Origin: Asterias rubens
Taxonomy: Eukaryota
Direction: 5' to 3'
NCBI RefSeq assembly: GCF_902459465.1
Contig: NC_047066.1
Coordinates: forward strand, 3,596,001 to 3,660,000
Length of the DNA: 64,000 nucleotides
Position numbers and translations under genes: made by a program. Numbering within the stretch: position 1 is the stretch's first letter; every line of letters starts with the position of its first letter. The notes beneath the pieces were generated by a model. It made no database searches. It was given only the letters and a program-made list of their open reading frames with translations, and was not told where the DNA came from. Shown here one piece after another: positions 1 to 60,220 of this stretch.

Positions 1-264
1 ACAGGGGGATGCTCTATCAGTAAATCTTATAATAGCTCACATTCCAATCCGTGATCTGACAGACAGTCCTTTGATAAATGACTCTTCACATGTTTTGGGG
101 TTCAGGGTTGATAAAAGTACACAGCAGGCATGATTTTAAAATAATGCAAATACTAAGCATGTTCAGTGCAAAATATGTTATGTTATAACACAGATTAGGA
201 ATCAATAGTGAGGCTAATGCTGAAAGAAAAAAAAATACATTATTTATTACTCATAGAACATCTT

Positions 265-7559: not shown

Positions 7560-8625
7560 AGACGCTCCGTTTGAATAGTCACAAAAACATGCAGTCAAGA
7601 AAAAAAACTACAACACAAACCACTTGCTGACAGAGGGCATTATAACTCCTGTAACCAAAATCACAGTGATATTGGTTTGTTGATTCTTGTATGACCTTAT
7701 GACCTTAGTCTTGTTTTCAAGTGTTCTGCGCCTCTGATCATTTTGTATGATAGTGATATTGGTTTGTGGGGTGATAGTGGTTACACACCGACCTTTTGGA
7801 AACGAAGACCGGGAAGGCAACACATGCTCAACGTCTGTTTGGAGATAATGAAGGCATGCTGCGACCAAGCCAAATCTCAACACTTGCCCAAGATCAGTGT
7901 AGTTGACATATACAGTAGACAGAAACTTGTAGTCGCCTGCTCCGCAGCTGAAGGATGATGATTGGTTAATTTTTTGTTGTGACCAAGACTAGTAATATGA
8001 CCTTTGCCCTTTTTTCTGCAGGCACTTGATGTCATCAAGAAGTTCAAGGAGACGGAAACTATGCCTATTGATCGCGCCCAGATGAGACTGAAGATCTTGC
8101 TTCCCATCAAAGAGGGCAAAAAAATCAAGACCAAATTGAAAACGATGATAAAAACGATGGAACGAGAAGAGTTTGGAGAGCAGCTTGAGATGGTAGGTCA
8201 TTCTATGGGTGGTTGTTGTTCCTTGCTATCAACAGCAACTTGTGGAATTTAAAGACACTGGACACTATGGGTAATAGTAAAATTTTCACAGGTTTGTTAT
8301 TTTATGCATATGTTGAGATACGCCAAGTAAGAAGACTAGTCTTTGACAATTACCAAAGGTTTCCAGTGTCTTTAACAGCTTTATGAAATTGTATTGACCT
8401 ATGTATTGACCTATCTGGTTTAAAAAATTATTGTGGGCCATTTCAACTGGAAGTTATGTCAGCCAACGAGTTTAAGACTCTTCCATTTGTTTGCAGGTGT
8501 GTCTTGTGGATCCTGGCTGTTACAGAGAGATGGAGGATCTGATTCGCTCATCCACCAAGGGCCAGGGCGTCATCGAAGTCCTTGATCTTAAAGATGTCGA
8601 GGAAGGAGACGAAAAATTAGAATGA
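4560..8625 (+). CDS. SBDS: Ribosome maturation factor SBDS, 5 coding exons: 4560-4690, 5510-5639, 6426-6626, 8022-8192, 8497-8625 (762 nt, 253 aa)
   Basis: Spliced translation [37 protein letters not shown]...[11 protein letters not shown]...[11 protein letters not shown]...[10 protein letters not shown] matches the SBDS family end to end. All introns are GT-AG with consistent phases. Exon sizes 131/130/201/171/129 mirror the human layout as recalled (128/130/201/165/129). Confidence 0.97.
5791..6151 (-). mobile_element. Related tRNA-Leu-headed SINE subfamily in SBDS intron 2
   Basis: Minus-strand head GTGTCATCGCCGAGTGGATAAGAGCACCGAACTCAAGCTCTGG...GGGTTTGAATCC with a different body and a TAA tail. 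Confidence 0.75.
7331..7557. repeat. (TTA)n microsatellites (7331-7368 and ~7527-7557); a (GTTT)n run also lies at 6627-6658
   Basis: Read directly from the sequence. Confidence 0.9.
7376..7523 (-). mobile_element. Short tRNA-derived SINE family 2; further copies at ~22455-22620, ~30790-30948, ~35105-35275 (+) and ~42013-42165
   Basis: B-box GTGGGATTCGAACCC on the plus strand, with shared TACACCGATGTGTGT and CTAGAGCAG blocks. Confidence 0.65.
8249..8375. mobile_element. Internally deleted copy of MITE family 1 in SBDS intron 4
   Basis: Both TIRs and TTAA flanks are retained; only ~120 bp long. Confidence 0.7.
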
Positions 8626-35000: not shown

Positions 35001-38000
35001 AATAGAATGTGTGTTCAAGAGAATTTGGAAATAAATACATTCGCCATTTTGAGTATAACTCGGTACCCGCTGGTAATAAATAGGAATCAAACTGCCTCTA
35101 ACTACTGTGCCATCTCGGCGGTCTAGTTGGTGAGACACTGCTCTAGAACGGCAAAGGTTGGGTGTTCGAATCCAACCCGATTAATATGCCAGCGGATTTT
35201 TGTCATAGGACTTGGGAAAGTACGGAGTATACAATGCTTCACACACATCGGTGTACGGACAAAGCCAAAAAATATTTGTTATCCCCGATACAAATTTAAG
35301 ATCAATTGAATTGAGTCCAACTCCATTAATGTAAAGGTTAGGCACGCATGCTATCCTGTTGGTGTGTGGGCTGTAATAGACCCTTTCGATGAAATACGTA
35401 AATTCAAACATTTTAGTTGGCAAAATGAGGGAACATCATCCTGTTTTGTACACGGCTAATGGCTGCGTGACACAGACGCGATTGCTCGTCTGCTGAAGGC
35501 ACATCTCTAGGACGTTTGCCAACCAAAAGGGTCTGTACGCATGCGTGAATGTAATTAGAAATCTATTCGAAAAAGCTAATGTTTAGATGTCTGGTACCCT
35601 ACCTGCATATCTGACACTCTTGCCAAACAGCATTGTCCAGAAGTAAGGGACACTGTCGAGCTCCACTTCCTGGTCTAGCATGTTGAGGGCAGCAATGCGA
35701 CCTGAATAAAAAGTTAGAGGCAGAAAATATGCAGAGACAAATTAGATAGTTACAGTGGCTATTTATTTCACAAGGCAGACACTTTATATTCAGAAAACAG
35801 TCTGACGTTTCTCCTCACTACAAAAAGTTTAACTCTCAAATGGTTTATTGCCTCCTCAATGAGGCATCCACTGTCTTTCTGTCAATGTACGCATTCAGTA
35901 CAAAGTCCTGCTCCTCACGGTCAATGCTGTACATGGTCTCTTCCCTCAGTACATTTTCGAACTGGTTACACCATAGACTAAAAAAAAGTCTCCAGATCCT
36001 TGTCGCAGCATCTCCTACAAGTTCCCCCATGCAGAACAAAAACTGATGGTCAAAGATCCATTGCCTTCAGAGCACCCACCCTTTGGAACTCTCTTCCTGC
36101 TACCCTCCCATTCCCAGACGAACCCGGATCTCTTCAAAATTCACCTCAAATCCTACCTGTTTGCTCTTACTTTTTAGTAATCTTTTATTATTAAGTTAAT
36201 TTGTAGATTAAACTTGTATTTTGTTGTTTGTAAAGCGCATTGAGAGTTCTCCCAGAACTGAATTGTGCTCTATAAAAAAAACTTCTTCTTATTATTACTA
36301 TTGTGACCCTCTCAAATGCTTAGAGTCGTTGAAAGGATAGAGGCTCTCTCTAACCTGTGAGAGAGACGAAGACTAATGTGTTGTCAGGTCTTCGATGAAT
36401 ATCAGTATAAGGGTGGCGGAAGCATGCAAAATTGAAATGCTTGCCAAAAGAGGGTGCTTCTCTCGAATAATTAAATAATTCATACAGGTTAAGGAAATTT
36501 TACATAAAAAATAAATGCAATAAAAATAATAGTGGGGGTACAGTTTGTATGACCGTCACACTATTATAACATGGGATGCGTTGTATGAAACACTGAAGCT
36601 TGACTTACCATGTCCTGAGGCTACCTGCCAGTGGCCGATATTAACCTCGAGATCACCCATCATGGCTAGAGGTACCTGAGCAATGTCACCGGCTGCAAAC
36701 ACGTTTGGCTTGTTCGTCCGCAAAAACTAGAAACCATGAATAATAGCAGACAAAAATACTTGTTATACCACGGTAACAGATTATGAACTCTTGTATTTGT
36801 CAAGAGCAAACCTACGATGTGCTACACACACGCTTGTTAATACCTCTGTAACGGATTACAAAGTTTTATTGTTGGAGAACCAATCACGTAATATAGTACA
36901 AAGACGCATGTTAAATGGAAAGTGATGTATTGGGGGATACATCACCTTGATCATTCCCACCAATGGTCGTATCAAGCACCTTGTTAGATACTATAAATAG
37001 GCCCGGGTATGAGCAGAGCAAGGGTATGAGGTTGTAAATACGATGATACTTTGATACTACATAAATTAATACACATTCCTCTGTGTCGTGCCGTCCAGAA
37101 CAGTGGTATAAAAAAACAGTTATTGTACGATGTGACAGCGTCCATTGGTTTAATACAACCCTCACAGCTAGCGAGGCGGGATATAGGTTTGTGGAGTGCG
37201 AGTGCCGAGGGCCGTAGACCAGGCATGCCAGGCCTGACATTACGAATGTGTGTCACGACCCAGATGTAGATTGGAGCGAGTTGATGAAGTGCCTTGAAGG
37301 CAGTGAACACTATTGGTAATTTCTCCAAATAATTATTAGCAAGAAAACTTCCTTGGTAACGAGTAATGGGGAGCTGTTGACAGTATAAAACATTGAGAGA
37401 AACGGCTCCCTCTGAAGTAATGTAGTTTTCGAGAAAGAAATAATTTTCCACGAATTCGAGATCTCAGATTAAGAATTTGATGTCTCGAAATCAAGCATCT
37501 GAAAGCACACAACTTCGTGTGACAAGGGTGTTTTTTTTTTTCATTATTATCTCGCAACTTTGACGACCACTTGAGCTAAAATTTTCACAGGTTTGTTTGT
37601 TTATGCATATGTTGAGATACACCAAGTGAGAAGACTGGTCTTTGACAATTACCAATAGTGTCCACTGCCTTTAAACGTGAGAAGGATGATTGTGAACTGA
37701 ATTGTTACCATACCTTGTCAACGATTACAGCGCCCTTGGTATTCAGTGCGATCTCGCTCTCCTTCAAGAACCCCGTGGAAGGTTTAACGCCCACACCCAT
37801 GATGCATATGTCTGCCGGTAACGTCTCACCATTCTGCAACACAACCTCTGTGATCCGGCCGTCGTCGTTACCGCTCAACCTCTCTGGGTTGCTGCTTAGG
37901 TAAAACTTGATGCCCTTTGCTTCGGCCATCTGCAAACAACCCCAATACAAGTTTTACAAAGTAAAATAAACATATGTGAAAATGTACACTAAATGTTCCG

Positions 38001-41000
38001 GAGCTTAAAGAGAAAAATCAAATGTGATTTTGCTTTAGAAGAACCATTGATTCCATTGCATCAATTATCCCTGGGGTTGCCTTCTGGCTTCTGCTCATGA
38101 TTATTCATTTTTGCCCTCCACTGTAGGGCCACAAGTCAGATGGCCGATGGTCAGAAGGACACTAACTATATGACGTACAAGTTGCATTTCCTTGAAGATT
38201 GCTTTGCAAGCTTTATGACAATATTTGTTACTCTTTAATAAGTCACTTTCATTTTATTCTTTCATCGGGTCACTAGTATAGGTCACTAGGTCAACAATTG
38301 TTAGTCTAATTTCGGCTCTGGGAGCAATTTCCCGCAAAACATGTGCGTGCAATGTCTTTATGTGCGACTAGTTCACAGTGGCGCAAATCTCATGCACTAG
38401 ACTATAGTAGTTAAAAGATTTAGGTACTTTTTGTAACAAAAAACACAATGTCCACAGATTTACATTAAACGTAAAACGTTTGAAGATAATGATAGTAGAA
38501 AGCGTACCTTAAAATATTAGTTGCCGAGGTGCTGTAGTTTTTGAGAAATGAGTAAAACAACGTCATGAAAATACATTTTTACATGGTAAAATAATTTTCA
38601 TCTCATGACAACAGAGACGAAAATTATTTTCATGACAATGTTTTACTCACTTCTCGAAAACTACAGCACCTCTGCAAGTAATACTTTCAGGGAAGCTTTC
38701 TACTATCATTATCTTCAAAGTAAGTTTAGTGTTAATCTGTAGACATTGTGTTTTTTGTCCACGTGACCTTGTTTCAGCCAAACAGAATACAGAACTAGTA
38801 ATAAATAAAACTATAAAGTCACCTTTTGTAGTGCTTTGCCGATGGATTCTCCTAGTGACGCAATATAAGGGGCGGAGCTTCTGCCTACAATTGAGACGCT
38901 CAACGCTTTACCAGCAAAATAAGCAGCCATCTCCATACCTTGTCAACAGAGAGGTACACAAATATAATAATAGTAATAGAACTAGAATCGGGCTACACCT
39001 TGGCCTGTATTTGATTGAGTTATTTCGCAAAATTACAGAGAATTCTCAAAGCACTTTTCAAAAGTCAAGAGAGAAAAACAACGACTGTTGAATACAAAAA
39101 TTATACAAAAATGCATACAATGAAAAATTTAAGTTATTTCACAAAAAGAAATTGTCATCAAAAATAACTTCAACCCTTCACCTAGCTCTTGCACAGTCAG
39201 CGACTTTAAACTGCACTAGAGAGGAGCTTTCATTTTATCATTGGGGAGTGAACTCCAGGGTTCAGGAGATATATACTTTGGTGGTGGCTGGAAAAGGAGT
39301 GAGGAGATTTTGTGAGCCAGAACAAAGATTTCCAGTAGGACATGAGTCATGGATCATTGATGTGATTTTAAACAACTTGGCGCGAATATTAATTGCTTAC
39401 CGATGAACGAGGTACCAATGATGACCACGTTTTTACCCTTGCCTTGCTCAGCGATGTAGTTGGCATCTTCAGGACTCCGTAGTATGCAGACATTCTTCAA
39501 GTCACTGCCTGGAATGTCTAGTACAATCGGGCTGTGGGATAGTCAGCAAGTTTTAAAATCAGACAAAGCGTTTTGGTTTGTTTTTCAGTGAAAAAGGTTG
39601 AATTTCTTGAAACAAGTGAGAATGACTCCAAGAGACCCCCCCCCCCAAAATGGCAATATTTTTCATAAAGTTGAATAAACAGAATGTATTACCTGCAAGT
39701 TGTGCAGGGGTGCATCTACTGTATGTTTGTGTACAAACCTATGTAAAATCCTGAAATTTTGTAAAGCCATGTACAGACCTGTGCAAAAGCTTGAAATGCT
39801 AATATTTGCTTAGTAATCGTTTATGCAGTATTTTCTGCTGAAATCAGGCCAAGATCCCTTGCACGTGACATCGCACTATAAAAAAGGAAGCCCACTTTTC
39901 CGTTGTTTAACGTCAGTACTGGTGGCCTATAAAACAAGAGGGGAAGTAAAGGCTGTATTTGTAGATGAAGTCATCTAAGATTAAAACGTCCTGCTAATGC
40001 AAATGCGATACAAATTTGTACGTCACAGCCTTGCTTTCGCTGTAAATGTTTCGCAGGAGTTCAGCACCTTTCAACTGATGCAAATTATTCGTTGCGATTT
40101 GGTGACGCAAAAATTCGCCAGGCTTCAAACGTTTTCTTACGTTCCCCCAGTAGCAATGAGAAGGGTGTCGAAGTTGACGCTGTTGCCGTTCTTGAAGGTG
40201 ACTGAGTTGAGCAAAGTGTCCACCTCCGTGGCTTCCATACCAGTCTGGACTTCAACATCGTACACATTGTAGAAATCTGGCTTGCGTAGCGCTAACTCCT
40301 CTCCGGATGACGTCAGGGCCTGTTTAAAGGGAAGGTCTACAATTGGTAATCGCCCTTAAAGGCACTGGACACTTTAGGTAATACTCAAAATAATGGTTAG
40401 CAAAAAAAAAAAAAAATTACCTGGTAACAAGCAATGGAGAGCTGTTGATAGTATTGAACATTGCGAGAAACGGCTCCCTCTGAAGTAACATAGGTTTAAT
40501 AAAAGACTCCAGGCCTGATGCCTTTTATTATGCATCTGAAAGCACATAAATTTGTGCAACAAGGGTGTTTTATTTCTTTCAATTATTCTCTTGCAACTTC
40601 GATGACCAATGGAGTCCAAATTTTCCCAGGTTTGTTATTTTATTCATACGTTTGGATACACCAAGTGAGAATACTGGTCTTTGTCAATTACCATTTGTGA
40701 CCAGTGCATTGAAGTCCATGCTTACCTTACTGAGTTTTGTTCTATCATACGGCAGATGTTTCTCTTTTGTTGCTATGACGACTCGACCTTTAAACCCTTC
40801 TTGTCTCAGCGTCTCAACACATGTGGCAGCTGCCCCACCTTGAAAAAACAATAAAAACACCACACAGTCAATAGGGCTCAACCTCATAGAGCTGCTTAAA
40901 GGCAGTGGACACTTTTGGTACTCAAAATAATTATTAGCATAAAACCTTACTTGGTAACGTTTAATGGGGAGAGGTTGATAGTATAAAACATTGTGAGAAA

Positions 41001-44000
41001 TGGCTCCCTCTGAAGTAACATAGTTTTTGAGACAGAAGTAATTTTCCACAAATTAAATTTCGAGACCTCAGATTTAGAATTTGAGGTCTCAAAATCAAGC
41101 ATCTGAAAGCACACAACTTCGTGTGACAAGGGTGTTTTTTCTTTCATTATTATCTCGCAACTTGGATGATCGATTGAGCTCAAATTTTCACAAGTTTGTT
41201 ATTTTATGCAAGTGTTGAGATACACCTAGTGAGAAGACTGGTCTTTTACAATTACTAATAGTGTACAGGGTCTTTAAGCACAGACATTAGATAAGCACAA
41301 CAAAATTATGCTTACCACTGCTTACCAGAATAAGGTTACCAGCTAACACATCAGTTAAGCAGATCTATGAAATTGAGTCCAGGTCTTTTGCCTTGATATA
41401 CATTCCAAACTTGGTGGCAAGCTTGCAATTTGTTTCTGGAAAGCACGCAATACATCCCAAGCTTGCAAGCGTTAGCTTAGCGGCAAGCTCCACCATTAGC
41501 GCATTGGCGAGGTTGCCAGTAAGCATGGACAGCAAGTTTGTCACAAACCATTGCAAGCTTCACCTGCATGTGAGCTTCATATTTGCAACAAGTTGGCATT
41601 TTTGGAACCCAACTTGCCAGAAAGGTTGCTGGCGTACTTCAAGTTACTAGACATGTTTCACTTACATAGCTAGCGCAGAAATTCTGAGCAAAATGGTTAT
41701 CTTAAGCGCAGAATTCTGTGGTAAACAGAGCCAGGTCTCATTTTCAGTCTCGCACCTTCCGCGCTTGGTCTTAAACCTTACCCCCAAAGTATTGGTCTTC
41801 TGTTATCACATACAATACACAAACCTTCAACTTCTGTTTAAATGGTAACACTCTTACCTCCTCCAATGATAAGGATGGTCTTGTCAACTTCAGGGGATTT
41901 GCAGGACATGTTTTTGATTCGTTTGAAGGATTCTAAAGCCTATTACAAAATACAGAATCAAAATAATGTCACAGATTAATCAATACGTTATGTTGCATTG
42001 AGGATAAAGATTGTGTTTTTACCCATTCACCGATGTGTGTAAAGCACTGTACAATCCATACTTTCCAAAGTCTGGTGACAAGAAAAATCCACAGGCATAA
42101 TACTCAGGTGGGATTCGAACCCACAACCTCGAACAGATATCTTACCACCAAACCACTGAGACTGATAGAGATAAATTTGAATCCTATATTTTAGCAATAC
42201 TTTTATGTGCTTAGTAAGTTTTTGTGCTTTCAGGCTTTATGAAATTGGGCCCAGGACGCAAACCCACAATCTGCTGATCAGAAACATCACAGTTTTAGTC
42301 CAGTGTGACTGACCGTTCGACCACAGCAAACTTAGAATCAACAATCTTATAAAAACAACTGACATACCTTCTTTGTGGACGTGACAATGACATCATCACC
42401 ATCAATTCTGACCTGTAGAGCAAGTGAAAAAGAGTCCAGTTTATTTTCTCTCTATATCATTCCTCCTGCCAGTGTGCATGCACTTACAGATTTTAGCTGG
42501 ACGCAGATCCTAACCATACCCCCACCACTACTCCTAACCCTACTTCTTCTCTTAACACCAACCCCAAGTTGTGTTTCCTTTGTCAGGTCATGGTTTGAAT
42601 GTGGCAATTATATTTGCAAACGATAACCCCAGAAGCTAAAAAGTAAAAACAAAAATAGTAGCAACGGTGGGCACGTATTTTCATTTTCTCGGAATACTGA
42701 CCCAAAGTGGTTTATGATAAAAGGAATTTCCAGAGACTAACACCCGTTTCATAAAGGTGCCCCAGAGTCGCGCCAAACCAAATTCAGAATTAAGTACACG
42801 AAAAGTTTGACGCCTGAACAAGAGCTACTGGACAGCTAGGATTTGAAAGATCGACTGTTGCAGTCGTTCGGAACGACTCTGGAGCGCCTTGATTTCAGAC
42901 ATTGATCTTGTCATTAACTAAGCCAATGTAAATATTAAGTTTAGCGTGCCTGTCTGAACCAAAATTTATTTGGGTCGACGTTGAGTCGCTCGTAATCTGT
43001 TTGGTTCGGCACGACTCTGGAGCGCCTGTCTGAAAGGCGTGTAAAGTAACATACATGTAGATCAGTATGGTACGTTTTGGTTGTGTATGTCATGATAGGA
43101 GCAGGACTAACCTCATACTTGGCGACACTATCAAGCCCAGGAAAGTCTTCAATATCACCCGTTGTTGCATTGAAGCAAGCGCCATGCCAAGGGCAACGTA
43201 TCCTTCCATTACACAACACACCTATGAGGAGAGACAACAATACATGTTAAAGGCACTGGACACTATTGGTAAACTCTCAAAATAATTTTTTAGCATAGTA
43301 TAAAACATTGTGACAAACGAGTCTCTCTGAACTACCTTAGTTTTTGAGAAAGATCTGAAAGTGCGCAAATTTGTGCATCAAGGGTGTTTTTCTTTCATTA
43401 ATCTCTTGCAACTTTGATGACCAATCGAGTCAAAATGTGCAGAGATGTGTTCTTTTATGCATATGCTGGGATACACCAAGTAAAAACACTGGTCTTTGGC
43501 AAGTAAGGTGTCTAGTGCCTTTAAAGTAGTTGTGTGTCCTACATGAACTCCAATAGACATGCAGACAAGGGTTAAAAGAAAAGACCTGATTGCACAGCAT
43601 GCAATACATTGTGTACCTTTAACTAGAGGAGCTCCATAATGCGTACATTTGTGACCAATAGCGCTGAATACTCCAAGCTGCTTCACCAGCAGAGCCTTCC
43701 CGCTTCCAACCTCTACCTCTCGCATCCTGAGGGATCACACGGATATAAAACATTACTATTACATACCTACCAAGACATCGATAATTTTTAGCCGAAAATT
43801 CATCTTTTTGGGGGAAATAATCTGATACAATCGTAACCCCACATCAACCAGCAACATCTCATGTGTACCTCATTAGAGTTTGAAGTATACTGAAAGGATT
43901 TTTGATGCATTTTGAAACACTTTTTTGTACACAAATAAATTTCTGCAGTATTTTTCTTTTTCGGGTGGCGATTATGTTATTCGAATAAAAAAAAGGCCTT

Positions 44001-47000
44001 CTTTAAAGATTTTATATTTCTTTTTTTTTGGGGGGTGAGCTTTGAAAAATCTCACGCATAGTTGGCCTCTGAACTTGGCATCTCTGCTACTATTATACAT
44101 TTGGTTTGCGGTAACACCATGTGTGTATCTACTTGACAGGTAGAGTTTGTTCTTAGAGATCTAGCCTGTCTTTCTTTATTCTACTACCGCGGAGAAGATT
44201 TATTAGATTGTTTGGGAGACTTCTCAGTTCTGAAAAGAACTGTCCTGCTTTTTTAACTACTACCGGTACCCGGGTGGAAGGTATAACTGTAGAGATGGCA
44301 AAACTGATACACCTTCCAAGTGTAGAGAGGTGTGTGGATTATCAGTGTTAATTGCCCCCCCCTTTTAATTTTGTAATAGAACTTTGACCCTACCTTTAGA
44401 ATTAATGGATCAGTCCAAGATTGCCACATCAGCAGAGATACTCTGGACAGGATGTTGGTCTGGTCATTCTTATACCAGTGATGACCAGTAACAGACATTA
44501 AAGGAGTTTCTTCTAGATATATATCGTGACAGTGGTTTTTCATTATTCTTTACAGGTATGTTGATTTTATTTTCTTTATTAATTCCATTGTGCTTTTTAA
44601 TAGAACTATCTAGATTATTGAAGTTCATTATTTGATTTGTGTTATGAACTTGATCAAGACAATGTCACTTGAAGACAGTTGGGAGTTTTCACTCCAAGGT
44701 TACAAGATCAAGGAAGGATTTGTTTTAGACTTGGAAGACAGTTGAAATGTAGTTTAGAGTTCCTTTTGTTAAGTCATAATGGACAGTGATAATGATTTGA
44801 TTTAGATGAAGTGAAATTGCTTTCTTTAAATACTGCTTGGACTTTGTTTAGTATTTAAAGGTTACTTTTATTGGCTAAGGTATCACTTTTCTAAGTTTGC
44901 TTTCAAGTGTTAAAGAGTACTTTATTCGTAATATAGACATTCATTACTAGTTTCTGTTTGATGTATTTGTTGGAAAGAACTGTAATGTTCTTTCAGATAT
45001 ATTTTAGTTTGGAAGTATTGTTAACCAGTACTTTGACCGAACTCCACGTATAGAGAATATTGGTAGCCAAAGACCATTGTTTATTGGAGGTTCAAGATCT
45101 TCCTATACTAGACCACACAGTGTGAGCCCAGTGGCTCTGAAGTTGTTTATTGGGTGGTGTTGCAGTAGGGCAGGAAGTGAGATCAGAAGGCAAGAACACA
45201 TACTTTTCTTGTGAATACTTAAGTAGCTGTAGGCAAGAACACCTATTTTCTTGTGAATACTTAAGTAGCTGTAGGTAAGAACACCTATTTTTCTTGTGAA
45301 TATTTAATTAGCTATGCCTTGATCATTTACTGCAGGGACAAGATTGTGATGATTATAGGTTGAACCCCTGTTGAAATGAGTTATTGTGTATGCATTTAAA
45401 GGTGTTTGTTTTATGAAGTTTATTCTTTGAACCATTTTTGAACCGGATTTAGAGATCAGTACATTTAATTTAGTTATTTGTTAGAAGTAAGTTTGAGTTT
45501 TATGCATTACATCTTCAGTAAAGTAAGTACATAGTTTTAAGATTGACAAGTACTTAATGTTTTGATAATGGTTGATGTAACGTGATTCTTATACCAGTGA
45601 TGACCAGTAACAGACATTAAAGGAGTTTCTTCTAGATATATATCGTGACAGTGGTTTTTCATTATTCTTTACAGTGGTCATCAACCCGATTTTAATGTGC
45701 TCCGTTTAGATTGCCAGTTTGGTAATTTGGCGGGTGCAACATTTGGAGGCACGAGAGGGATGAGCGTATTCTTCAACGCACCTGACCTGGCGTAGAAGGA
45801 TGACAACGCTCGTCCAGAGATACGAACCTGATCATCAGTGACTTGCTGACGACTTCCATGACAAGATGAGCAGACAGTAGCGGGAAGGTCAACGTGAGTC
45901 AACTGGACGTGCCATAGTCAGGGTGTACCATCGGCCAGTGGGAGGATCGCCGTACAACGGGATTGCTGCCACACCGAACACGAAGGGCAGTCGCAGACAC
46001 AGAAAGGACCAGCAAGCTATAATAATCATTTAGCATGGAGGACCTCATCAAGACTTTGGAGAGAGTAATCCTTGGACTCAGCAGCCTGTCCATCGACCAA
46101 CTCATCCAAGTATGCACACATCTAGATCTTGAGGCAGAGGACGTGGAGAAAACACCAAAGGGCCGTCTTCGGATACAACGGCGACTACTGGCTCACATTA
46201 ACAGTGAGGAAGTGGAAGACAGTGACGACGGGGGAGTGGAGCTACTCCAGACATTAGACAGCTTCATGAAAGACCTCAAGCAAGAGTCCGAAGATGAACC
46301 AGTCTCCATTGACCCAGCTGAGAAGAAAGACGACCCAAGCAGCCCACCTAAGCTTGAGAGTACAGAGCCCTCAACGACACAGCCGTCTGCAACACCGACC
46401 GATGTGGCCCACTTGCTGAGACGGGAGTTCAGAATATCCGGTCAGATAGGAGAGCCAGGCCAAAAGGATCGTCTTTCCTTTACCAGTCTTGCCAACCAAA
46501 TCGAGGCTGGATTGGAGAAAAGCTACCCAGACAGAGATATCGTTCAAGGAGTGATCCGAGCTATAGCACCAGGATCATCACTCCGAAGCTACCTGGAAGG
46601 ACGAAGTAAGATCTCTCTGCCCAGCCTTCGCCGAATTATAAGAGCACACTACCAGGAGAGAGATGCGACAGATCTCTATAAACAACTCTCCCAGCTGACC
46701 CAAGGAGCCAAGGAGTCGGCCCAGGCTTTCCTGTTAAAGGCATTTGACATTCGTCAAAAGGTCCTTTTTGCTAGCCAGGAAAGTGATTCCAGACTCCGCT
46801 ATGACCCACACCTAGTGCAGGAGATGTTTCGCCATACGATATTGACTGGCTTGAGGAGCGATGCCATCAAGACAGAACTCCGGCCCTACCTGGATGAACC
46901 AAAGACGTCGGACGAATTGCTCTTCGAAAAGATAAATGTGTTCTCCAGCCTAGAAGAAGAAAGACGGCAGAAACGCACCCAAAACAAAGCAACCACAGTG

Positions 47001-50000
47001 AACGAGATCTGTGAAGTAAAGGACAAACAGACCATGCCAGCGAAACCAGGGCTACTGATGACAGAGATTGCAGAGCTGAAAGCAGGGATTGCAGAGCTGA
47101 GTTCATTGAAGGGCCAAGTAGCAGCACTCCAAGAATCTTTCCAGAGGACACCACAACAGCAACCAGCACAATTTGATACATCCTCATCCCGAGTTCGTCG
47201 AGGATGCCACAAGTGTCAAGAAGCGGGAACCGGTTCTGACTGTGACCACTGCTTCAAGTGTGGGTCATCAGAACACTTTGCTCGTGGATGTCGGAGAAGC
47301 AGAGACCGTACACACCAGGGAAACGGTTCAGGGTTACGTCCGCGGGACAGGGAGTAGCCAGGAGAGAAAGACAGTCCCAACCACACCAGCAGGATCGAGA
47401 CCCCCGACCCATAACTTCAATATGCCACATCACACCCAGACAGCATCGGAAGGTGACAAACCTCATCGGACCAAGATGTACCGTAGATTGCTACCTCAAT
47501 AATGCATCTACCACTGTGTTATGGGATACCGGAGCCCAGGTTTCCTTAATCAGTTCACAGTGGCTTCACCAAAACCTACCAAATGAACCAATCCGCCCCC
47601 TTTGTGATCTTCTTCAGTCCGAGAGGAACTTGGATCTCCGAGCTGCTAACGACACACCAATCCCCTTTGAAGGCTGGATTGAACTCGAGTTAAGAATGAA
47701 GACGCCTCGGACGTGCACACCAGTAGTGTTTCCAGCATTGATCACTCAAAATAGGATCCAACAACCGATTATTGGATACAATGTGATCGAGACCCTTGTA
47801 CATCACTCAGGTGAAGACGCCAGCAGTATTCTTGGAGGAGCAATGAAGAACTTGGAACCCACTAGAGCTGTAAAGTTGGTTCACTTGATTCAGGCTAATG
47901 ATCCAGAAGAAGTCTGCAGTGTCATATCAGGGAGGCAGAACATTATGATACCCAAACACAGCAACTTTGGTATTCGATGTTTGGCACGAGCTGGCTTGAC
48001 AAACGGCAAGATAGAAGGACTGTTCGTACCAGACGTTGAACAGCAATGGCCGGAAGGTCTTCAGGTAGAGGAATCAGTGGTGAATCTCAAAACAGGTACG
48101 GCGACCCCAGTCGTAATCCGAGTGACGAACTCCACAGACCGAGACATCATGTTGAAACGACGTAGTCTGTTGGGCCACATACAGCTTGTCAATTCAGTAT
48201 GCCCCATGGAACCCTCTATGCTGAAGACATGGACACCATCACCCAAGCAAGGAGAAACCACTGTTTCCAGTATCTCCACCGAGGAGGAATGGATTCCCCC
48301 TGTTAATCTGAGTCATCTGACAACCTCACAGAGGTCTGCTGCTGAGAAGCTTCTTCGAGAGGAGTCGGCCGCTTTTGCCAAAGATGACTCGGATCTGGGA
48401 CGTGTCCCCAACTTGAAGATGGAGATTCGGCTACGTGATGAGGAACCCGTCAGAAAAACGTACATGTCAATGCCCCGCCCACTGTACCAGGAAGTCCGGA
48501 CGTACCTAGCAGACCTAATCAGCCGTGACTGGATCAGGAAGTCTTCTTCTCCGTACTCATCACCAGTAGTGTGTGTTCGGAAAAAGGATGGAAGTCTCAG
48601 ACTCTGTGTTGACTACCGAGAGTTAAACCAGAAAACCATTCCTGATCGTCAGCCAATCCCTCGAATCAAGGACGTGTTGGACAGCCTAGGCGGCAACCAA
48701 TGGTTTTCAACCCTCGACCAAGGTAAAGCATATCACCAGGGTTTTATGTCAGAGCAAAGTTGTCCACTCACAGCTTTCATCACACCTTGGGGACTTTACG
48801 AATGGGTCAGGATTCCATTTGGGTTGACAAATGCACCAGCAGTTTTCCAGCGATTTATGGAGACTTGCCTTGATGGACTCAATGGTGAAATTGCCATGAC
48901 CTACCTTGACGATGTTTTGGTGTTTAGCGACAACTTTCAAGCCCACCTTGATCATCTTCGGCAGGTCCTGAAGCGTTTACAGAAGCATGGTGTAAAGTTA
49001 AGACCCAACAAGTGCGAGTTCTTTCAAAGTGAAGTACGCTACCTGGGTCGACTGGTATCAGCAGAAGGTCATCGACTTGATCCATCCGACATATCTGCTG
49101 TTCGGTCCCTCAGCGAAAAGCGACCAGAGACTGTTGGAGATGTCAGGAAGTTACTTGGACTACTGGGCTACTACCGCAGTTACATCCAGGACTTTTCTCG
49201 CATCGCACGACCATTATATGACCTACTGAAAGTGACACCGAGTGAGGAGCAAACGACCCAGAAACTCAAAGCCAAGGGAAAAGCAAGCTCGAAGATGAAG
49301 TCTGCGCAGAAGCTTTCGAAACAGAAAGTGGAGTGGAAGGATCCTCATCAAAAGATACTTGAGGAGATTCTTGGGTTTCTTATGGCACCACCAATCATGG
49401 CCTTTCCAGACTACAATGAGCCGTTTGTAGTTCACACTGATGCATCGAATGATGGACTGGGTGCAGTACTTTACCAACGACAGAAGGGGAAGATGAGAGT
49501 CATCGCATATGGGTCCCGTACCCTCAGCCCGGCGGAGAAAAACTATCATTTCCATTCTGGTAAGCTGGAATTTATGGCACTAAAATGGGCAGTGACCGAT
49601 AAATTCAGAGACTACTTGTACTACTCATCCGCTTTCACCGTGTTCACCGACAATAATCCCTTGACATATGTGTTGACTTCTGCCCGGCTGAATGCAACAG
49701 GTCATCGATGGGTGGCGGAGCTAGCAGACTTCAATTTCAACATAAAGTACCGCCCTGGAAAGAGCAATGCAGATGCAGACACCCTCTCGAGATTACCACT
49801 GGACATGGAGAACTACATGAGAACATGTACGACAGAAGTCTCCCAGGCAGAATTGGAGACCACAGTCCATGCCATCGAAGCTCAGAGTCAAGGAACCGTC
49901 ACATGGGCTTCTGCGATCACCACTGATCCTGAGACGTTGCTACCTACCACATTACCAGGTAATCAAATGTTCAGTAAACGTGATGTACAGCGTGCGCAGA

Positions 50001-53000
50001 AAGAGGACCAGTGCCTAGCCAGAGTTATCTTCTTCCTTCAGAGAGGTCAACGTCCAAGCAAGCGAGAGTTAACAAAGGAGCATCCCGATACCATTGCCTT
50101 ACTGCGTGAATGGGTTAACCTGAGGCTGGAAGAGGACATCTTGTTTCGAGTAAAGGGCAATAGACACCAGATGATCATTCCCTTGACGATGCGACAAACC
50201 GTCTACAAGGAGCTCCATGACAACATGGGACACATTGGTGCTGGGCGTGTCTTGGACCTTGCCAGAAACCGGTTCTACTGGCCCCACATGCAACGAGATG
50301 TTGAACATTATTGCTCCAAAGTCTGTCCTTGCCTGAAAGACAGAAAACCCGCACAACACACGAGGGAACCCCTGGGAACAATCATCACGACGGCTCCCTT
50401 TGAACTGATTTCCATTGATTTTCTGCATTTAGAACCGAGCAAGGGTGGATTTGAATACATCTTGGTGATTGTTGACAATTTCACCAGGTTTGCCCAGGCA
50501 TATGCAACCCGAGATAAGTCTGGGAAAACTGTAGCTGATAAAATCTTCAATGATTTTGTTCTTCGCTTCGGGTATCCTCAGCGAATTCATCATGACCAAG
50601 GAGGAGAATTCGAAAACAAGATGTTCAAACGACTCCAACAACTCTCGGGTATTACACCTTCCAGGACGACCCCATACCATCCGCAGGGGAACGGTCAATG
50701 CGAAAGACTGAACAGGACCCTCCTCGGTATGTTGCGGACCCTCACTGAAGCCCAGAAATCTAACTGGAAGGAGTCACTCCAGAAAGTGGTACATGCGTAT
50801 AATTGTACTACTAGCAGTGCAACAGGGTTCTCACCGTTCTTCTTGTTGTATGGACGCTCCCCTCGTCTACCAATTGATGTTGCATTTGGCCTGGACCCAA
50901 AAGCTGGACCGAAAGAAGAGGACCACAACCAATTTGTGAAACGGTGGAAAACACAGATGGAGGAGGCTTACTTGATTGCAGAACGCCAGGCAGCCAAGTC
51001 GACTGAACGAGGAAAGCAGTATCATGACCAGAAGGCCCACAGTACCGTTCTCCAACCGGGAGACCGTGTCCTGATCCGCAATGTTGGACGCCATCTTGGA
51101 CCAGGTAAACTCCGCTCCTACTGGGAGGACAATGTCTACATCGTTGTTGGTAGAAAAGGAGAACACTCTCCAGTCTATGAAGTGAAGCAAGAAACGGGTA
51201 ACATGAAGCACCGTGTAGTTCATCGCAATCTCCTTCTCCCCTGCAACAGCATGAGAACAGATGTTGAACCCAAGAAGACGCTTCCCCAACCACAGAGACG
51301 AATTCCAAAGCCCAACCGTCGACGAATCTCCAATGAATCCAGTCCGGCAACGAGTGACGACAGTTCAGATGAAGAAGTTACCATGGTAATGAACACTCCA
51401 TCTGATCCAAGACCGTTCCGAGCAATGGAGGAAGTGAACCAGCCCACATTGAATCCTGCAGCAGTGCCCTTCCCATGGAATGCACCAGACGTGGAGCACA
51501 CACCTTCTATTGAGCCCCTAGAGCTTATCGATGGCGCTGGGGATAACCAGAACATTGAGGAACCTGATCCTCTGATAACTGCATCCGACACACCTGAGAC
51601 AATTTGTGAGGACACTCCCGCTGAACAGCCCCCACAACCAGCTGTATCCGATGCACCGGAGCCGAGTGATGACACTTCCACAGAACAGTCCCCACAACCA
51701 GAACCGGAACCAGAAGCACCCTCTGAAGGCAGACCAATCAGACAACGACATCCTCCACAACTGTTTGGGTATGCAAGTCTTGGTGAACCTTCGATGCAGA
51801 GCATGGACCCTCGAGTGGCTGCTGTTCAGGGATATCCTGTCCCACCTCAGTGGATGCTGCCTATGCAAATGCCTATGACACCATGGTTGAATCCTTATGT
51901 TCAGCAGGGTTCACCTATGATGCCACCGGCATGGATGTGGCAGCCAGCTCCACCACTAGTACGAGACGCACAGAGTTATTAGACGAGGACGCAACAACAT
52001 GACGAGAATCCAGGCTAGCAACGCAATGAAGTTCCCACAGCAGAGTATGGACGGGACGTAGGAACATCAATCAGTAGCTTCAATGTGAGGACTACCCACC
52101 GGACTGACTTGATGTTCACTAGCGATGTTGCATAGCTTTCATCCAGTTCGAATCTATTTCTTTATCTTCTTCACGAGAAGTTCGGAGATGAGGGGATGTG
52201 GAATTAGCTACTCCATTAAACTTTTCTCCAACTAGTTGCCTTGATGAGGAGGAATTGTCAAGTAATTAGTGTGAGTATTTAACTCTAGAAATGGACACTC
52301 AATGAACTGTTCCTTGGATGATAAGGATTGCCGTTAGAGGTTTTGTTCATAAATTGATCTTAATGTATTATTTGTAATGTTGAGGACAACATTTATTTTG
52401 AGGGGTAGTATGTAGAGATGGCAAAACTGATACACCTTCCAAGTGTAGAGAGGTGTGTGGATTATCAGTGTTAATTGCCCCCCCCTTTTAATTTTGTAAT
52501 AGAACTTTGACCCTACCTTTAGAATTAATGGATCAGTCCAAGATTGCCACATCAGCAGAGATACTCTGGACAGGATGTTGGTCTGGTCATTCTTATACCA
52601 GTGATGACCAGTAACAGACATTAAAGGAGTTTCTTCTAGATATATATCGTGACAGTGGTTTTTCATTATTCTTTACAGGTATGTTGATTTTATTTTCTTT
52701 ATTAATTCCATTGTGCTTTTTAATAGAACTATCTAGATTATTGAAGTTCATTATTTGATTTGTGTTATGAACTTGATCAAGACAATGTCACTTGAAGACA
52801 GTTGGGAGTTTTCACTCCAAGGTTACAAGATCAAGGAAGGATTTGTTTTAGACTTGGAAGACAGTTGAAATGTAGTTTAGAGTTCCTTTTGTTAAGTCAT
52901 AATGGACAGTGATAATGATTTGATTTAGATGAAGTGAAATTGCTTTCTTTAAATACTGCTTGGACTTTGTTTAGTATTTAAAGGTTACTTTTATTGGCTA

Positions 53001-56000
53001 AGGTATCACTTTTCTAAGTTTGCTTTCAAGTGTTAAAGAGTACTTTATTCGTAATATAGACATTCATTACTAGTTTCTGTTTGATGTATTTGTTGGAAAG
53101 AACTGTAATGTTCTTTCAGATATATTTTAGTTTGGAAGTATTGTTAACCAGTACTTTGACCGAACTCCACGTATAGAGAATATTGGTAGCCAAAGACCAT
53201 TGTTTATTGGAGGTTCAAGATCTTCCTATACTAGACCACACAGTGTGAGCCCAGTGGCTCTGAAGTTGTTTATTGGGTGGTGTTGCAGTAGGGCAGGAAG
53301 TGAGATCAGAAGGCAAGAACACATACTTTTCTTGTGAATACTTAAGTAGCTGTAGGCAAGAACACCTATTTTCTTGTGAATACTTAAGTAGCTGTAGGTA
53401 AGAACACCTATTTTTCTTGTGAATATTTAATTAGCTATGCCTTGATCATTTACTGCAGGGACAAGATTGTGATGATTATAGGTTGAACCCCTGTTGAAAT
53501 GAGTTATTGTGTATGCATTTAAAGGTGTTTGTTTTATGAAGTTTATTCTTTGAACCATTTTTGAACCGGATTTAGAGATCAGTACATTTAATTTAGTTAT
53601 TTGTTAGAAGTAAGTTTGAGTTTTATGCATTACATCTTCAGTAAAGTAAGTACATAGTTTTAAGATTGACAAGTACTTAATGTTTTGATAATGGTTGATG
53701 TAACGTGATTCTTATACCAGTGATGACCAGTAACAGACATTAAAGGAGTTTCTTCTAGATATATATCGTGACAGTGGTTTTTCATTATTCTTTACAGTGG
53801 TCATCAACCCGATTTTAATGTGCTCCGTTTAGATTGCCAGTTTGGTAATTTGGCGGGTGCAACATAACAAATTGTCTGGGAACACTACTTTAGTTTATAG
53901 GATCTTAATTAACTGCCCTACCGCGGAGTCAGTCCTTGAATTGGTCTCAACGTTTAAACTAGAGCTTGCTCTAGTCATCGTCAGGAGACCATCTGTGTAT
54001 CTACTTGCTAGGTAGATTAGATACTTTTGAGAACTTGTCTTGCTTTATATTCAACTACCGCAGAGTAGATTTTCAGAGTTCGTGCGACTTCTCAGATCTG
54101 AAAAAGAACTGTCCTGCTTTTTAACTACTACTTTTCAGTCTCCTGATGATGACTAGAGCAAGCTAGTCAAAATGCTGAGACCAACTAACTCAATCCACGG
54201 TAGTGAAGTTAATAACAAGAAGTCCCCTTGATCCACTTAGTGAAAAGTAGTCATCCTGGCCGATTTTCTACCTTCAGCCCAGCTATGTAGAAAAGAACCG
54301 TCCTGCTTTTTAACTAGTAAGAAACCAATATTTGTTTTTTTAATGATGTTCAAGTGTCGTGGCCGAGCGGTTAAGAGCACCGAATTCAAACTCTGGTGTT
54401 TCTGATCAGCAGAGTGTGGGTTCGAATCCCCAGCCGTGACACTTGTGTCCTTAAGCAAGACACTTCACCATTGCTTCGTCCTTCGGATGGGACGTAAAGC
54501 CGTTGGTCCCATGTGTTGTGTAACGCATGTAAAAGAACCCAGTGCACTTATCGAAAAGAGAAGGGGTTTACCCCGGTGTTCCTGGCTGTGGCTGCTGTAT
54601 GCGCCGTAGCACCTTGTAAACCCTTATAAGGTGCTAAATAATTGGGTCTCATAATTCATCACTGCAATAACCTCTCTTTCTGAAAGTTTGTATATACTCA
54701 GCGCCTTGAGTACCTTGTTTGGTAGATGCTTGCGCCATATAAGACTTCAATATTATTCTTCTTATTATTATTATCCAAACTTACTCGCCATCTTTGAGGT
54801 CATCCACCTTACAGACTTTGACCTCGACTACGCTATCTCCATTCTTCGAGGAATGGGCTTTGGATGCTTTAGTACTGGGAGATTTCTTGGACGAAGCCGA
54901 TGTCTTACTGGCTCCCACACTCTTGCCTGTATCTGGTGCATCTACAAGAAAGAAAAACGTTGTTACTTAATCTGCCAATTGAACACTTTAATCATGGGAT
55001 GAGAGAAAAATCAAATTGACCTCATTGGGATTTGAACCCAAGACCCCTGACACTCCGGGCAGATGTTCTACCAACTTAGCTATGAGGCGGAGCGGCATAC
55101 TCCATTAGCTTGAACAATTTCAAACAACTGCTCCAATAAAATCCTGTACCCCCGCACAAGTCTGGCATCATACTCTCATCTGGTCAAGCCAGTACAAGAG
55201 TGAACTAATAATAACAATAATGTGTTTATATAGCGCATTTCCCATATACATGTTCAAATGCACTAAACAGAGATATTGTTAACAGAACAGGTGAGTTTTG
55301 AGCAGTGTTTTGAACACAATGACAGATTGTTGATTACGGAGAGACATTGGTAGTTTATTGCACAGTTTGGGAGCGGCAGCAATGAAGGCTCTATCACCAA
55401 GTATGGGTAGCATCTTGGGAGATGGGGGTACAGCGTGATGCCTTGAGAAGAGCAAAAGGAGAAGCGGGATGGTTGCGTGATAGTTATAAGTTCAGATAGG
55501 TAGGGAGGAGCTGGACCGTGGATGCATTTGAAGAAAGTGAAAGCGGAAGAAGGTTTTCCCCCCAAGATCTCGGTGTTTCATAAGATGCACTACTGTGTAG
55601 GGGTACATGTTGTCGTACCCCTTTCACACACCATTTATTTTAGTGATAAATTGAGCAAGCATATATGGACTTTCGTCTTTCATCTTTGAGAGAGCAAGGC
55701 CATTTTCTATTTTGCAAAGGGCACTTCCATTGGAAAATCTTAAAGTCTATGGGAATATTAAAGGGGCACCAAGGCCAAGACCAGGGCAACAGGGCCAAGA
55801 CGCGGGCAACAGAGGCCATGACTTCCAGGGTCTCTGTGAAATTCCAGGCTTGTCATCTTAAAGTTTTACTTTGTAATCCTGGTCTGGGCCCAATTTCATA
55901 GCGCTGCTTAACGTTAAGCAAATTTGCGTGCTTACTGTAGCAGAAAAATTTGCTTAAGCCTTGTAGCATATTTCACAGGTTAGCAGAAAAATTGGGCGGC

Positions 56001-59635: not shown

Positions 59636-60024
59636 TTAAAGGCAGTGGACACTATTCAATTATTAACTCAAAATAATTATTAGCATAAAACCTTACTTGG
59701 TAACGAGTAATGGGGAGAGGTTGATAGTATAACACATTGTGAGAAACGGCTCCCTCTGAAGTGAAGTAGTTTTCGAGAAAGAAGTAATTTTCCACGGATT
59801 TGATTTCGAGACCTCAAGTTTAGAACTTGAGGTCTCGAAATCAAGCATACAAATGCACACAACTTCGTGTGACCAGGGTGTTTTTTTCTTCCGTAGTTAT
59901 CTCGCAACTCCAACGACCAATTGAGCTCAAATTTGCACAGGTTTGTTATTTTACGCATACGCTGAGATACACCAAGTGAGAAGACTGGTCTTTGACAATT
60001 ACTAATAGTGTCCAGTGTCTTTAA
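59636..60024. mobile_element. MITE family 1 copy
   Basis: TTAA flanks and TIRs. Confidence 0.8.
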
Positions 60025-60220
60025 AAGGAGTCCGAACACTTATTTTTACTTTTAGAATTAATTTGCAAAATGTGTGTGAAAAAAAAATATTAAAAGAACT
60101 GAAAGTGTTATGTCTATCAATAATCTTTTTTACATGTAATACATGTAGCATTAACAGAGGTCCAAAACGTTACACACCTATATGCTCAGGGGGAACCTTT
60201 AAACTCAGCATCCACAAACT

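What the first reader, a model, noticed from the sequence alone, without database searches (positions are those of the whole stretch)
44466..45674. Gypsy LTR carries a 1,119-nt GT-AG intron bracketed by an exact 90-bp direct repeat (also at 52589-53797)
Seen: each 1,454-bp LTR has a 90-bp sequence twice (44466-44555 and 45585-45674). The repeat ends in TGGTTTTTCATTATTCTTTACAG. Copy 1 is followed by GTATGT (donor) and copy 2 supplies the pyrimidine tract and AG acceptor. Splicing 44556-45674 would leave exactly one repeat and a 335-bp LTR. The end of copy 1 is both acceptor and donor (AG|GT, a recursive-splice-like site), and each copy holds an ATTAAA (44497, 45616), the only polyA-like hexamer I saw on the LTR sense strand. 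Inference: the element may switch between a long-LTR and a short-LTR form by splicing before reverse transcription. It could also splice from the 5' LTR donor to a 3' LTR acceptor to drop gag-pol, or have two alternative R regions. The layout also matches intron birth by local duplication of an AG|GT site. I do not recall this architecture being described, but I have not searched.
Basis: partly seen in the sequence, partly recalled or inferred. Interest (0 to 1): 0.82.

Follow-up and report, generated by a model that had tools for sequence, protein, structure and literature searches.

The report
Repeat-bracketed intron inside a Gypsy LTR
A young Ty3/Gypsy retrotransposon, along with a whole clade of its marine-animal relatives, carries an intron-like 1-kb module inside each LTR, flanked by two copies of a 64-97-nt segment that stay identical; this suggests the element splices its own LTR and rewrites one copy at each reverse transcription, although no spliced RNA has been seen yet.

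Summary
Each 1,454-bp LTR reads A(178)-c(90)-X(1029)-c(90)-B(67), with an exact 90-bp repeat. Copy 1 is followed by GTATGT, and both copies end in a pyrimidine tract plus CAG.

In one element, GT-AG compatibility is not significant: about 0.4 AGGT sites are expected by chance in the repeat. The one 332-bp short solo LTR in the genome fits recombination as well as splicing.

The comparative evidence is what counts. Six further lineages show the same layout (five deeply diverged; LTRs mostly unalignable; pol 60-79% identical).
- c is 64-97 nt and X is about 0.9-1.0 kb.
- c starts at an initiator-like CAYT motif and ends in (Y)nCAG.
- Copy 1 is always followed by a donor matching the U1-complementary consensus at 8 of 9 positions (GTATGT six times, GTAAGA once). 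Copy 2 never is.
- The two copies evolve in concert: 16 substitutions plus 5 gap columns are shared by both copies between two sister families, against 1 difference within a family.

My best model is that c1 is a first exon and X+c2 an intron. The spliced leader c-B-PBS then equals c2-B-PBS, and strong-stop DNA made on it rewrites c2 each cycle.

RNA reads were only available from what may be another species. Depth was low and they showed no junction, so splicing is inferred, not shown. Another reader of this scan noted a similar repeat-bracketed LTR module elsewhere in this genome (s1-180044, not checked here).

The parts
44284..44287 (+). target-site duplication TAAC (second copy at 53865-53868)
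44288..45741 (+). 5' LTR, 1,454 bp, TG..CA; layout A-c1-X-c2-B
   Evidence: 100% identical to 52411-53864
44288..44465 (+). A: 178-bp upstream part, presumed ancestral U3 or promoter. It has 0-2 substitutions among family lineages; relatives keep roughly 145-200 bp here
44466..44555 (+). c1: upstream copy of the 90-bp repeat and proposed first exon. It starts at the A of an initiator-like TCATTC, has AGACAT at +28..+33, and ends in a pyrimidine tract plus CAG
44556..44561 (+). GTATGT donor directly after c1. The junction CAG|GTATGT matches the U1-complementary consensus at 8 of 9 positions
   Evidence: conserved in 7 of 7 lineages
44556..45584 (+). X: 1,029-bp module and proposed intron body. 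It carries nearly all substitutions between family members. Only its first ~13-25 nt and an AGGCAAG-type motif are shared with other families
45188..45313 (+). three tandem ~42-bp repeats, each starting AGGCAAGAACAC/AGGTAAGAACAC. They look enhancer-like and sit where relatives carry a conserved 22-25-nt motif that also starts AGGCAAG
45585..45674 (+). c2: downstream copy of the repeat. It is the proposed 3' end of the intron (pyrimidine tract plus CAG acceptor at 45674) and at the same time the R-like landing site for strong-stop DNA
45675..45741 (+). B: 67-bp U5-like end of the LTR
45744..45765 (+). primer-binding-site-like TGGAGGCACGAGAGGGAT.., two bases after the LTR. The same 22-mer occurs in L080, L081 and L089-L092
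46035..47357 (+). gag-like ORF, 440 aa, no Pfam hit
47258..51982 (+). pol ORF in the -1 frame relative to gag, with domain order RT, RNase H, integrase
52400..52410 (+). polypurine tract GAGGGGTAGTA directly before the 3' LTR, preceded by the conserved palindrome AATGTTGAGGACAACATT (52377-52394)
   Evidence: the same motifs occur in relatives
52411..53864 (+). 3' LTR, with c1 at 52589-52678 and c2 at 53708-53797

Best explanation
The LTR of this Ty3/Gypsy clade holds a real spliceosomal intron, and the repeat is what lets that intron coexist with reverse transcription.

Proposed steps:
1. Transcription can start at the initiator-like motif at the left edge of c1, so c1 is a 90-nt first exon.
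2. The donor CAG|GTATGT pairs with the acceptor at the end of c2, so X+c2 (44556-45674) is removed.
3. The mature 5' end is then c-B-PBS. That is the same sequence as c2-B-PBS, which a start at c2 would give directly.
4. At the 3' LTR the intron stays in the RNA that is copied, so A-c1-X is inherited as a U3-like part.
5. Minus-strand strong-stop DNA made on the spliced leader is the complement of c1+B. It lands on c2(+B) at the 3' end and so rewrites c2 from c1 in each cycle.

This would explain why the repeat begins at the transcription start and ends exactly at the exon junction, and why the two copies stay identical while c diverges between families. U1 snRNP bound to the donor next to c1 would also silence any poly(A) signal in c1, as in HIV-1 and foamy viruses. 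Short LTRs (A-c-B) would be occasional by-products: splicing or polyadenylation at c1 in the 3' LTR, reverse-transcriptase jumps, or DNA recombination.

What is shown: the architecture, the conserved signals, the concerted evolution, the restriction to one clade, and one short solo LTR. What is inferred: the transcription start sites, the splicing itself, the poly(A) site and the rewriting step.
For: (1) The same layout occurs in 7 lineages: the window, L089, L080, L091, L082, L083 and L087. In these, c is 64-97 nt, X is about 0.9-1.0 kb, and 40-67 nt separate c2 from the LTR end and PBS.
(2) The junction after c1 is CAG|GTATGT six times and CAG|GTAAGA once, each 8 of 9 to the U1-complementary consensus. 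After c2 the match is 3-6 of 9. The 20 nt before the CAG are 70-90% pyrimidine.
(3) X is otherwise unalignable between families, so these motifs are kept by selection.
(4) Concerted evolution: between L080 and L091, 16 substitutions and 5 gap columns are family-specific and shared by c1 and c2, against 1 within-family difference. Between the window and L089, 7 substitutions and 1 indel are shared, against 0. Old copies in this genome on C19 and C22 share a T>C in both repeat copies.
(5) The left edge of c lies from 6 nt upstream of, to exactly at, the A of an initiator-like TCATTC, TCACTT, CCATTC or CATTAC.
(6) All c-X-c families fall in one pol clade (support 100/99). The short-LTR families L084 (249 bp) and L086 (333 bp) lie outside it and lack a (Y)nCAG at the matching place.
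(7) Among copies in this genome, 10-17 substitutions fall in X and 0-3 in the 425 bp of A+c1+c2+B.
(8) One short A-c-B solo LTR with a target-site duplication exists.
Against: No RNA evidence exists. In three raw RNA-seq runs of 'organism B', the LTR including X is covered evenly at 1-10x in both orientations, the internal region has zero reads, and no 44555^45675 joint reached the reporting threshold. These runs may be from another species and do not sample an active element. No clear yUnAy branch point lies at the usual distance in most families. Transcription start and poly(A) sites are unknown. The enhancer-like motifs in X lie 200-400 nt upstream of c2, which would also suit a conventional start at c2. 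The pyrimidine- and GU-rich tail of c could equally be a poly(A) downstream element. The homogenisation could come from reverse-transcriptase template switching between direct repeats without any splicing.
Confidence: 0.5

Rival explanations
1. There is no productive splicing. The donor next to c1 only recruits U1 snRNP to silence the poly(A) module carried in c1, so transcripts run on to c2, whose identical module is active. The two copies are kept alike by reverse-transcriptase template switching between direct repeats, or by gene conversion.
For: c contains ATTAAA, AATAAA or ACTAAA in most families, followed by a GU/U-rich tail. Suppression of a 5' LTR poly(A) site by a nearby splice donor is established for foamy viruses and HIV-1 (PMC3694450). 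No spliced reads were seen.
Against: The hexamer is not conserved (ATTCAA in L080; none in L091 or L083). The right edge of the repeat coincides exactly with CAG|GT in every family, and the strict (Y)nCAG end of c is not needed for this role. A strong donor and acceptor 1 kb apart in one transcript would normally be spliced.
Confidence: 0.2
2. This is a plain internal duplication in U3. Transcription starts conventionally at c2, with X as promoter or enhancer, and c1 is a passenger or extra promoter copy. The splice-like motifs are incidental, and the short solo LTR arose by DNA recombination between repeats.
For: In a single element GT-AG is expected by chance about 0.4 times. Recombination gives the same short product. 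Enhancer-like repeats lie upstream of c2. No junction reads were found.
Against: This does not explain the conservation of the donor after c1 in 7 of 7 lineages across unalignable LTRs, the sharp conserved edges of c, or the concerted evolution of c1 and c2. A passenger copy should decay.
Confidence: 0.12
3. The element regularly alternates between long-LTR and short-LTR forms by splicing before reverse transcription, or splices the 5' LTR donor to the 3' LTR acceptor to drop gag-pol.
For: One 332-bp A-c-B LTR with a target-site duplication exists, and the donor and acceptor are conserved.
Against: Only one short copy was found. It is a solo LTR and has two private changes. No full-length element with short LTRs exists among about 8 full-length copies. 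No family in the clade was seen in a short form. No gag-pol-less derivative was found.
Confidence: 0.08

Closest known systems
Major splice donor in or near R that suppresses the 5' LTR poly(A) site (foamy viruses, HIV-1; PMC3694450)
   Same: A strong 5' splice site lies next to an LTR poly(A)-type module, which makes identical LTR sequences behave differently at the two ends of the RNA.
   Different: In those viruses the intron runs into the viral body and there is no acceptor inside the LTR. No duplicated R-like segment brackets the intron.
Spliced LTR-contained transcripts of maize LTR retrotransposons (bioRxiv 2026, PMC13192763)
   Same: There are introns with canonical junctions lying wholly inside LTRs, and younger elements are spliced more.
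   Different: Those are plant elements, described from long reads as lncRNA-like products. A text search of that preprint found no mention of a direct repeat, an R region or strand transfer. Here the situation is reversed: conserved architecture but no RNA data.
Deletion between direct repeats by reverse-transcriptase template switching in retroviral vectors (established knowledge, not searched here)
   Same: Direct repeats of about 100 nt, 1 kb apart, are collapsed during reverse transcription. This gives the same short product and could homogenise the copies.
   Different: That is an error process in engineered vectors. It predicts neither conserved splice signals nor repeat edges at a start site and an exon junction.
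Internal introns of LTR elements: env splicing in insect errantiviruses (PMC12992720); the Ogre intron in plants (from memory)
   Same: A Ty3/Gypsy element uses the host spliceosome on its own RNA.
   Different: Those introns lie in the internal region and serve to express a downstream ORF. This element has no env, and the intron is non-coding and inside the LTR.
BARE1 LTR with two TATA boxes giving separate RNA pools (from memory)
   Same: Two start sites in one LTR could give RNAs with different fates.
   Different: BARE1 has no intron and no exact repeat, and the two RNAs differ at their 5' ends. Here the two routes would converge on the same 5' end.

Membership tests
Ty3/Gypsy (Metaviridae) LTR retrotransposon | Paired LTRs ending TG..CA with a short target-site duplication | tested here: met
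   The LTRs are 1,454 bp and 100% identical, with target-site duplication TAAC
Ty3/Gypsy (Metaviridae) LTR retrotransposon | pol domain order RT, RNase H, integrase | tested here: met
   Pfam RVT_1 at 440-597, RT_RNaseH at 718-825, Integrase_H2C2 at 974-1027, rve at 1045-1142
Ty3/Gypsy (Metaviridae) LTR retrotransposon | PBS after the 5' LTR and PPT before the 3' LTR | tested here: met
   TGG... begins 2 nt after the LTR and is conserved in relatives; GAGGGGTAGTA lies before the 3' LTR. The primer tRNA was not identified.
U2-type GT-AG spliceosomal intron | 5' splice site complementary to U1 | tested here: met
   CAG|GTATGT or CAG|GTAAGA, 8 of 9 positions, in 7 of 7 lineages
U2-type GT-AG spliceosomal intron | Pyrimidine tract plus YAG acceptor | tested here: met
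   70-90% pyrimidine in the 20 nt before CAG in all lineages
U2-type GT-AG spliceosomal intron | Branch point 18-40 nt upstream of the acceptor | tested here: inconclusive
   A yTnAy match was found in only 3 of 7 lineages, at 13-40 nt. Animal branch points are degenerate.
U2-type GT-AG spliceosomal intron | Spliced RNA observed | tested here: inconclusive
   No 44555^45675 joint in 3 raw RNA runs. Depth was 1-10x, the organism label differed, and the element body had no reads.
R region (terminal redundancy) of an LTR | Bounded by the transcription start and the poly(A) site | not testable with these tools
   Only motif evidence exists: an initiator-like left edge, and a poly(A) hexamer in c in some families
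Intron gain by tandem duplication of an AGGT-containing segment | Two adjacent (tandem) copies, with intron length equal to unit length | tested here: not met
   The copies are separated by 1,029 nt of unrelated sequence, and the layout is ancient and clade-wide
Recursive splice (ratchet) site | An acceptor directly fused to a donor, used in two steps from an upstream donor | not tested
   The sequence (Y)nCAG|GTATGT fits, but no upstream donor or two-step product was looked for or seen

The most novel reading that the evidence does not exclude
A clade of marine-animal Ty3/Gypsy retrotransposons replicates through a genomic RNA whose 5' LTR intron has been spliced out. The LTR encodes a first exon, an intron carrying an enhancer module, and a second copy of the first exon. 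Strand transfer of strong-stop DNA from the spliced leader onto that second copy rebuilds the intron-containing LTR and rewrites the copy every generation. Splicing would then be a built-in step of LTR regeneration, and the element would look 'spliced' to the cell without losing gag-pol.
Probability: 0.42. Interest if true: 0.88.

Novelty: new variant of a known kind. Interest (0 to 1): 0.78.

Why it matters
LTR elements are usually thought to avoid splicing of their genomic RNA, and LTRs are read as U3-R-U5 with no processing inside. An LTR-internal intron that survives reverse transcription because its upstream exon is duplicated at its 3' end would have three consequences. It would be a new solution to the problem of carrying an intron through a retroelement life cycle. 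It would give the RNA a gene-like spliced mark, which could matter for export, translation and escape from surveillance of unspliced RNA. It would also supply a built-in mechanism for concerted evolution inside an LTR. A practical point follows: LTR annotation and dating tools would misread such LTRs, and short solo LTRs may be RNA-derived products. The claim is directly testable with long-read cDNA.

Tried and rejected
- RNA test. Only raw RNA runs of 'organism B' were on offer. They gave low, even, two-strand coverage of the LTR, none of gag, and no junction, so there is no verdict. The metatranscriptome contigs (X7) cannot bridge a 90-nt repeat.
- Short forms in the genome. One solo LTR was found. 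I rejected it as diagnostic because recombination between the repeats gives the identical sequence.
- X as an independent element. It occurs only inside this LTR family or as fragments, so a nested insertion with a 90-bp target duplication is rejected.
- ATTAAA as a conserved poly(A) signal: not conserved in relatives.
- Coding or RNA gene in X: tblastx between families gave only one marginal 20-aa match (E 0.004), and Rfam gave nothing near its thresholds.
- Sister families in this genome (pol 61-66% identical; C4:12183034, C17:6823928, C15:10174282, C14:8767050, C5:15754604, C11:8874835, C15:419317).
- Uninformative loci: L085 and the fish locus L088 showed no LTRs, L090 is 5'-truncated, and L081 and L092 stop inside or before c1.
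- Scans that found nothing: the metagenome scan with the conserved X motif and the viral-contig scan.
- Bacterial-type promoter and terminator scan: irrelevant and at chance level.

Full report
**The observation**

The element lies on the + strand.
- LTRs: 44288-45741 and 52411-53864. They are 1,454 bp, 100% identical and TG..CA.
- Target-site duplication: 4 bp, TAAC.
- Primer binding site: a TGG... sequence two bases after the 5' LTR.
- Polypurine tract: GAGGGGTAGTA before the 3' LTR.
- ORFs: gag (46035-47357), and pol in the -1 frame (47258-51982) with domain order RT, RNase H, integrase. This makes it Ty3/Gypsy.

Each LTR reads A(178)-c1(90)-X(1029)-c2(90)-B(67). The 90-bp repeat is exact, or 93 nt with one mismatch. 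c1 is followed by GTATGT, both copies end in a pyrimidine tract plus CAG, and ATTAAA occurs only inside the two copies.

**Why one element is not enough**

Any cut inside a direct repeat gives the same product. GT-AG compatibility therefore only needs an AGGT somewhere in or at the edge of the repeat, and about 0.4 are expected by chance.

The genome (417.6 Mb) holds about eight full-length or nearly full-length copies with long LTRs. It also holds older copies at about 88% identity that still carry both repeat copies, and exactly one short A-c-B LTR. The short one is a 332-bp solo LTR with target-site duplication ACTA at C1:10787122-10787453. Unequal recombination between c copies gives the identical sequence, so this copy does not discriminate between splicing and recombination.

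X is found only inside this LTR family, so it is not a nested transposon.

**RNA**

Only raw RNA runs labelled 'organism B' were available. They covered the LTR, X included, at 1-10x in both orientations. They gave no reads on the leader or gag, and no 44555^45675 joint. This may be another species with only LTR remnants expressed, so I take it as no verdict.

**Relatives**

Homologues of pol led to contigs from marine metagenome assemblies, and a PBS pattern scan led to contigs of a WGS record. Blastn finds almost no LTR similarity to most of them. Six further lineages nevertheless have the same layout.

| Lineage | c (nt) | X (nt) |
|---|---|---|
| L089 (88% nt to the window LTR) | 91 | not measured |
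| L080 | 73 | about 951 |
| L091 | 69 | 1013 |
| L082 | 97 | 887 |
| L083 | 87 | 906 |
| L087 | 64 | not measured |

In each lineage, 40-67 nt separate c2 from the LTR end and PBS. L081 begins inside c2 and ends inside c1, which fits the same layout.

Features shared by every lineage where the junction is visible:
- c ends in (Y)nCAG, with 70-90% pyrimidine in the 20 nt before it.
- c1 is followed by GTATGT (six lineages) or GTAAGA (L087). Each junction matches the U1-complementary consensus at 8 of 9 positions.
- c2 is followed by unrelated sequence matching that consensus at only 3-6 of 9.
- The left edge of c falls between 6 nt upstream of, and exactly at, the A of an initiator-like TCATTC, TCACTT, CCATTC or CATTAC.

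X cannot be aligned between families except for two features. The first is its opening 13-25 nt. The second is a 22-25-nt motif starting AGGCAAG that lies 207-302 nt before c2. The window carries related AGGCAAGAACAC/AGGTAAGAACAC repeats at a similar distance.

**Concerted evolution**

c differs strongly between families, yet the two copies within a family are identical or nearly so.
- L080 versus L091: 16 substitutions and 5 gap columns are family-specific and shared by c1 and c2. One column differs within a family.
- Window versus L089 (over the 42 nt visible in both copies): 7 substitutions and 1 indel are shared, and none differs within a family.
- In this genome, the old copies on C19 and C22 share a T>C in both repeat copies.
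- Among the younger lineages, 10-17 substitutions fall in X but only 0-3 in the 425 bp of A+c1+c2+B.

A one-off duplication would have let the copies drift apart, so something keeps re-copying one from the other. The homogenised tract has sharp edges that are conserved across families.

**Distribution**

In a pol tree, all c-X-c families sit in one clade (support 100/99). Two families with ordinary short LTRs lie outside it: L084 at 249 bp and L086 at 333 bp. Neither has a (Y)nCAG at the matching place. The short LTRs are about the size of A-c-B, so X plus the second c is probably a single old acquisition.

**Mechanism (inferred)**

One model explains both edges of the repeat and the homogenisation.
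1. c1 is the first exon, running from the start site to the donor.
2. X+c2 is the intron.
3. The spliced leader c-B-PBS is identical to c2-B-PBS.
4. Strong-stop DNA copied from that leader ends at the transcription start. It pairs with c2 at the RNA 3' end, where the intron is retained.
5. The progeny c2 is therefore a copy of c1, bounded on the left by the start site and on the right by the exon junction. A-c1-X is inherited from the 3' end.

The donor beside c1 would also silence any poly(A) module in c1, as shown for foamy viruses and HIV-1 (PMC3694450). Starts at c2 may coexist with starts at c1 and would converge on the same leader.

Short LTRs would be by-products of three possible events: 3' splicing, polyadenylation at c1, or jumps between the repeats.

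The main rival keeps the donor only as a U1 binding site and homogenises the copies by reverse-transcriptase template switching. It does not explain why the repeat ends exactly at CAG|GT with an acceptor-grade tail in every family.

**Known work**

- A 2026 maize preprint reports canonical introns inside LTRs from long reads. A text search of it found no mention of a direct repeat, an R region or strand transfer.
- Errantivirus env splicing is internal to the element body.
- My searches found no description of a repeat-bracketed LTR intron. The library lacks most subscription journals, so this is not proof of novelty.
- Another first-reader note in this genome describes a different Gypsy LTR with a 698-bp module bounded by a 59-bp repeat (s1-180044). 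I could not check it.

**Verdict**

The structure is real, old, clade-wide and under selection. The splice signals are the best-conserved part of the LTR. Splicing itself is still inferred. I put 0.5 on the spliced-leader model as stated. About 0.6 goes to the intron being spliced in at least some transcripts, wherever transcription starts.

Noticed in passing
window 44209-44264: A short segment just upstream of the 5' LTR is covered about 700x in all three RNA runs, against 1-10x on the LTR. Reads run on into unlike sequence on both sides. It is probably the core of a very abundant, transcribed short interspersed repeat.
   Followed up: no
window 52377-52394, and the same place in L080, L082, L083, L087: A conserved palindrome AATGTTGAGGACAACATT lies just before the polypurine tract. 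Its CAACATTT half also occurs at the LTR end/PBS junction (GCAACA|TTTGG). It may be a structure for priming or strand transfer.
   Followed up: no
L080:476-500, L082:7063-7087, L083:3042-3064; window 45188-45313: A 22-25-nt motif AGGCAAGTGCCAGGCTAGGAAAGAT is identical in L080 and L082 and differs at 3 positions in L083, within otherwise unalignable X modules. It is partly repeated in tandem in L082. The window has three AGGCAAGAACAC/AGGTAAGAACAC repeats at a similar distance from c2. It is likely a transcription-factor site.
   Followed up: partly
L083:1-13513: Two elements lie head to tail and share one LTR (internal-LTR-internal-LTR-internal), forming a tandem array of the retrotransposon.
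   Followed up: no
window 258-653, 12950-13341, 14521-14936, 15914-16300, 34307-34693, 37293-37675, 40896-41277, 59636-60025: There are at least eight copies of a ~390-410-bp dispersed repeat at 83-89% identity, all in the same orientation.
   Followed up: no
window 7235-7303 and 7681-7749: An exact 69-bp direct repeat with 446-bp spacing, unrelated to the Gypsy element.
   Followed up: no
L024:1500-1640 (G000:C4:4346362-4346499): An 87%-identical c-B fragment of this LTR lies next to a tRNA-like GGGATTCAAACCCACAACC stretch, apparently inside an intron of a gene on the other strand.
   Followed up: no
L017 (G000:C22:6361727-6362529): This LTR copy has an internal deletion of LTR positions 569-1218, inside X, and keeps both c copies.
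   Followed up: no
L016 (G000:C33): This old, truncated copy (88%) has GCATGT instead of GTATGT after c1. It is the only copy in this genome without GT there.
   Followed up: partly
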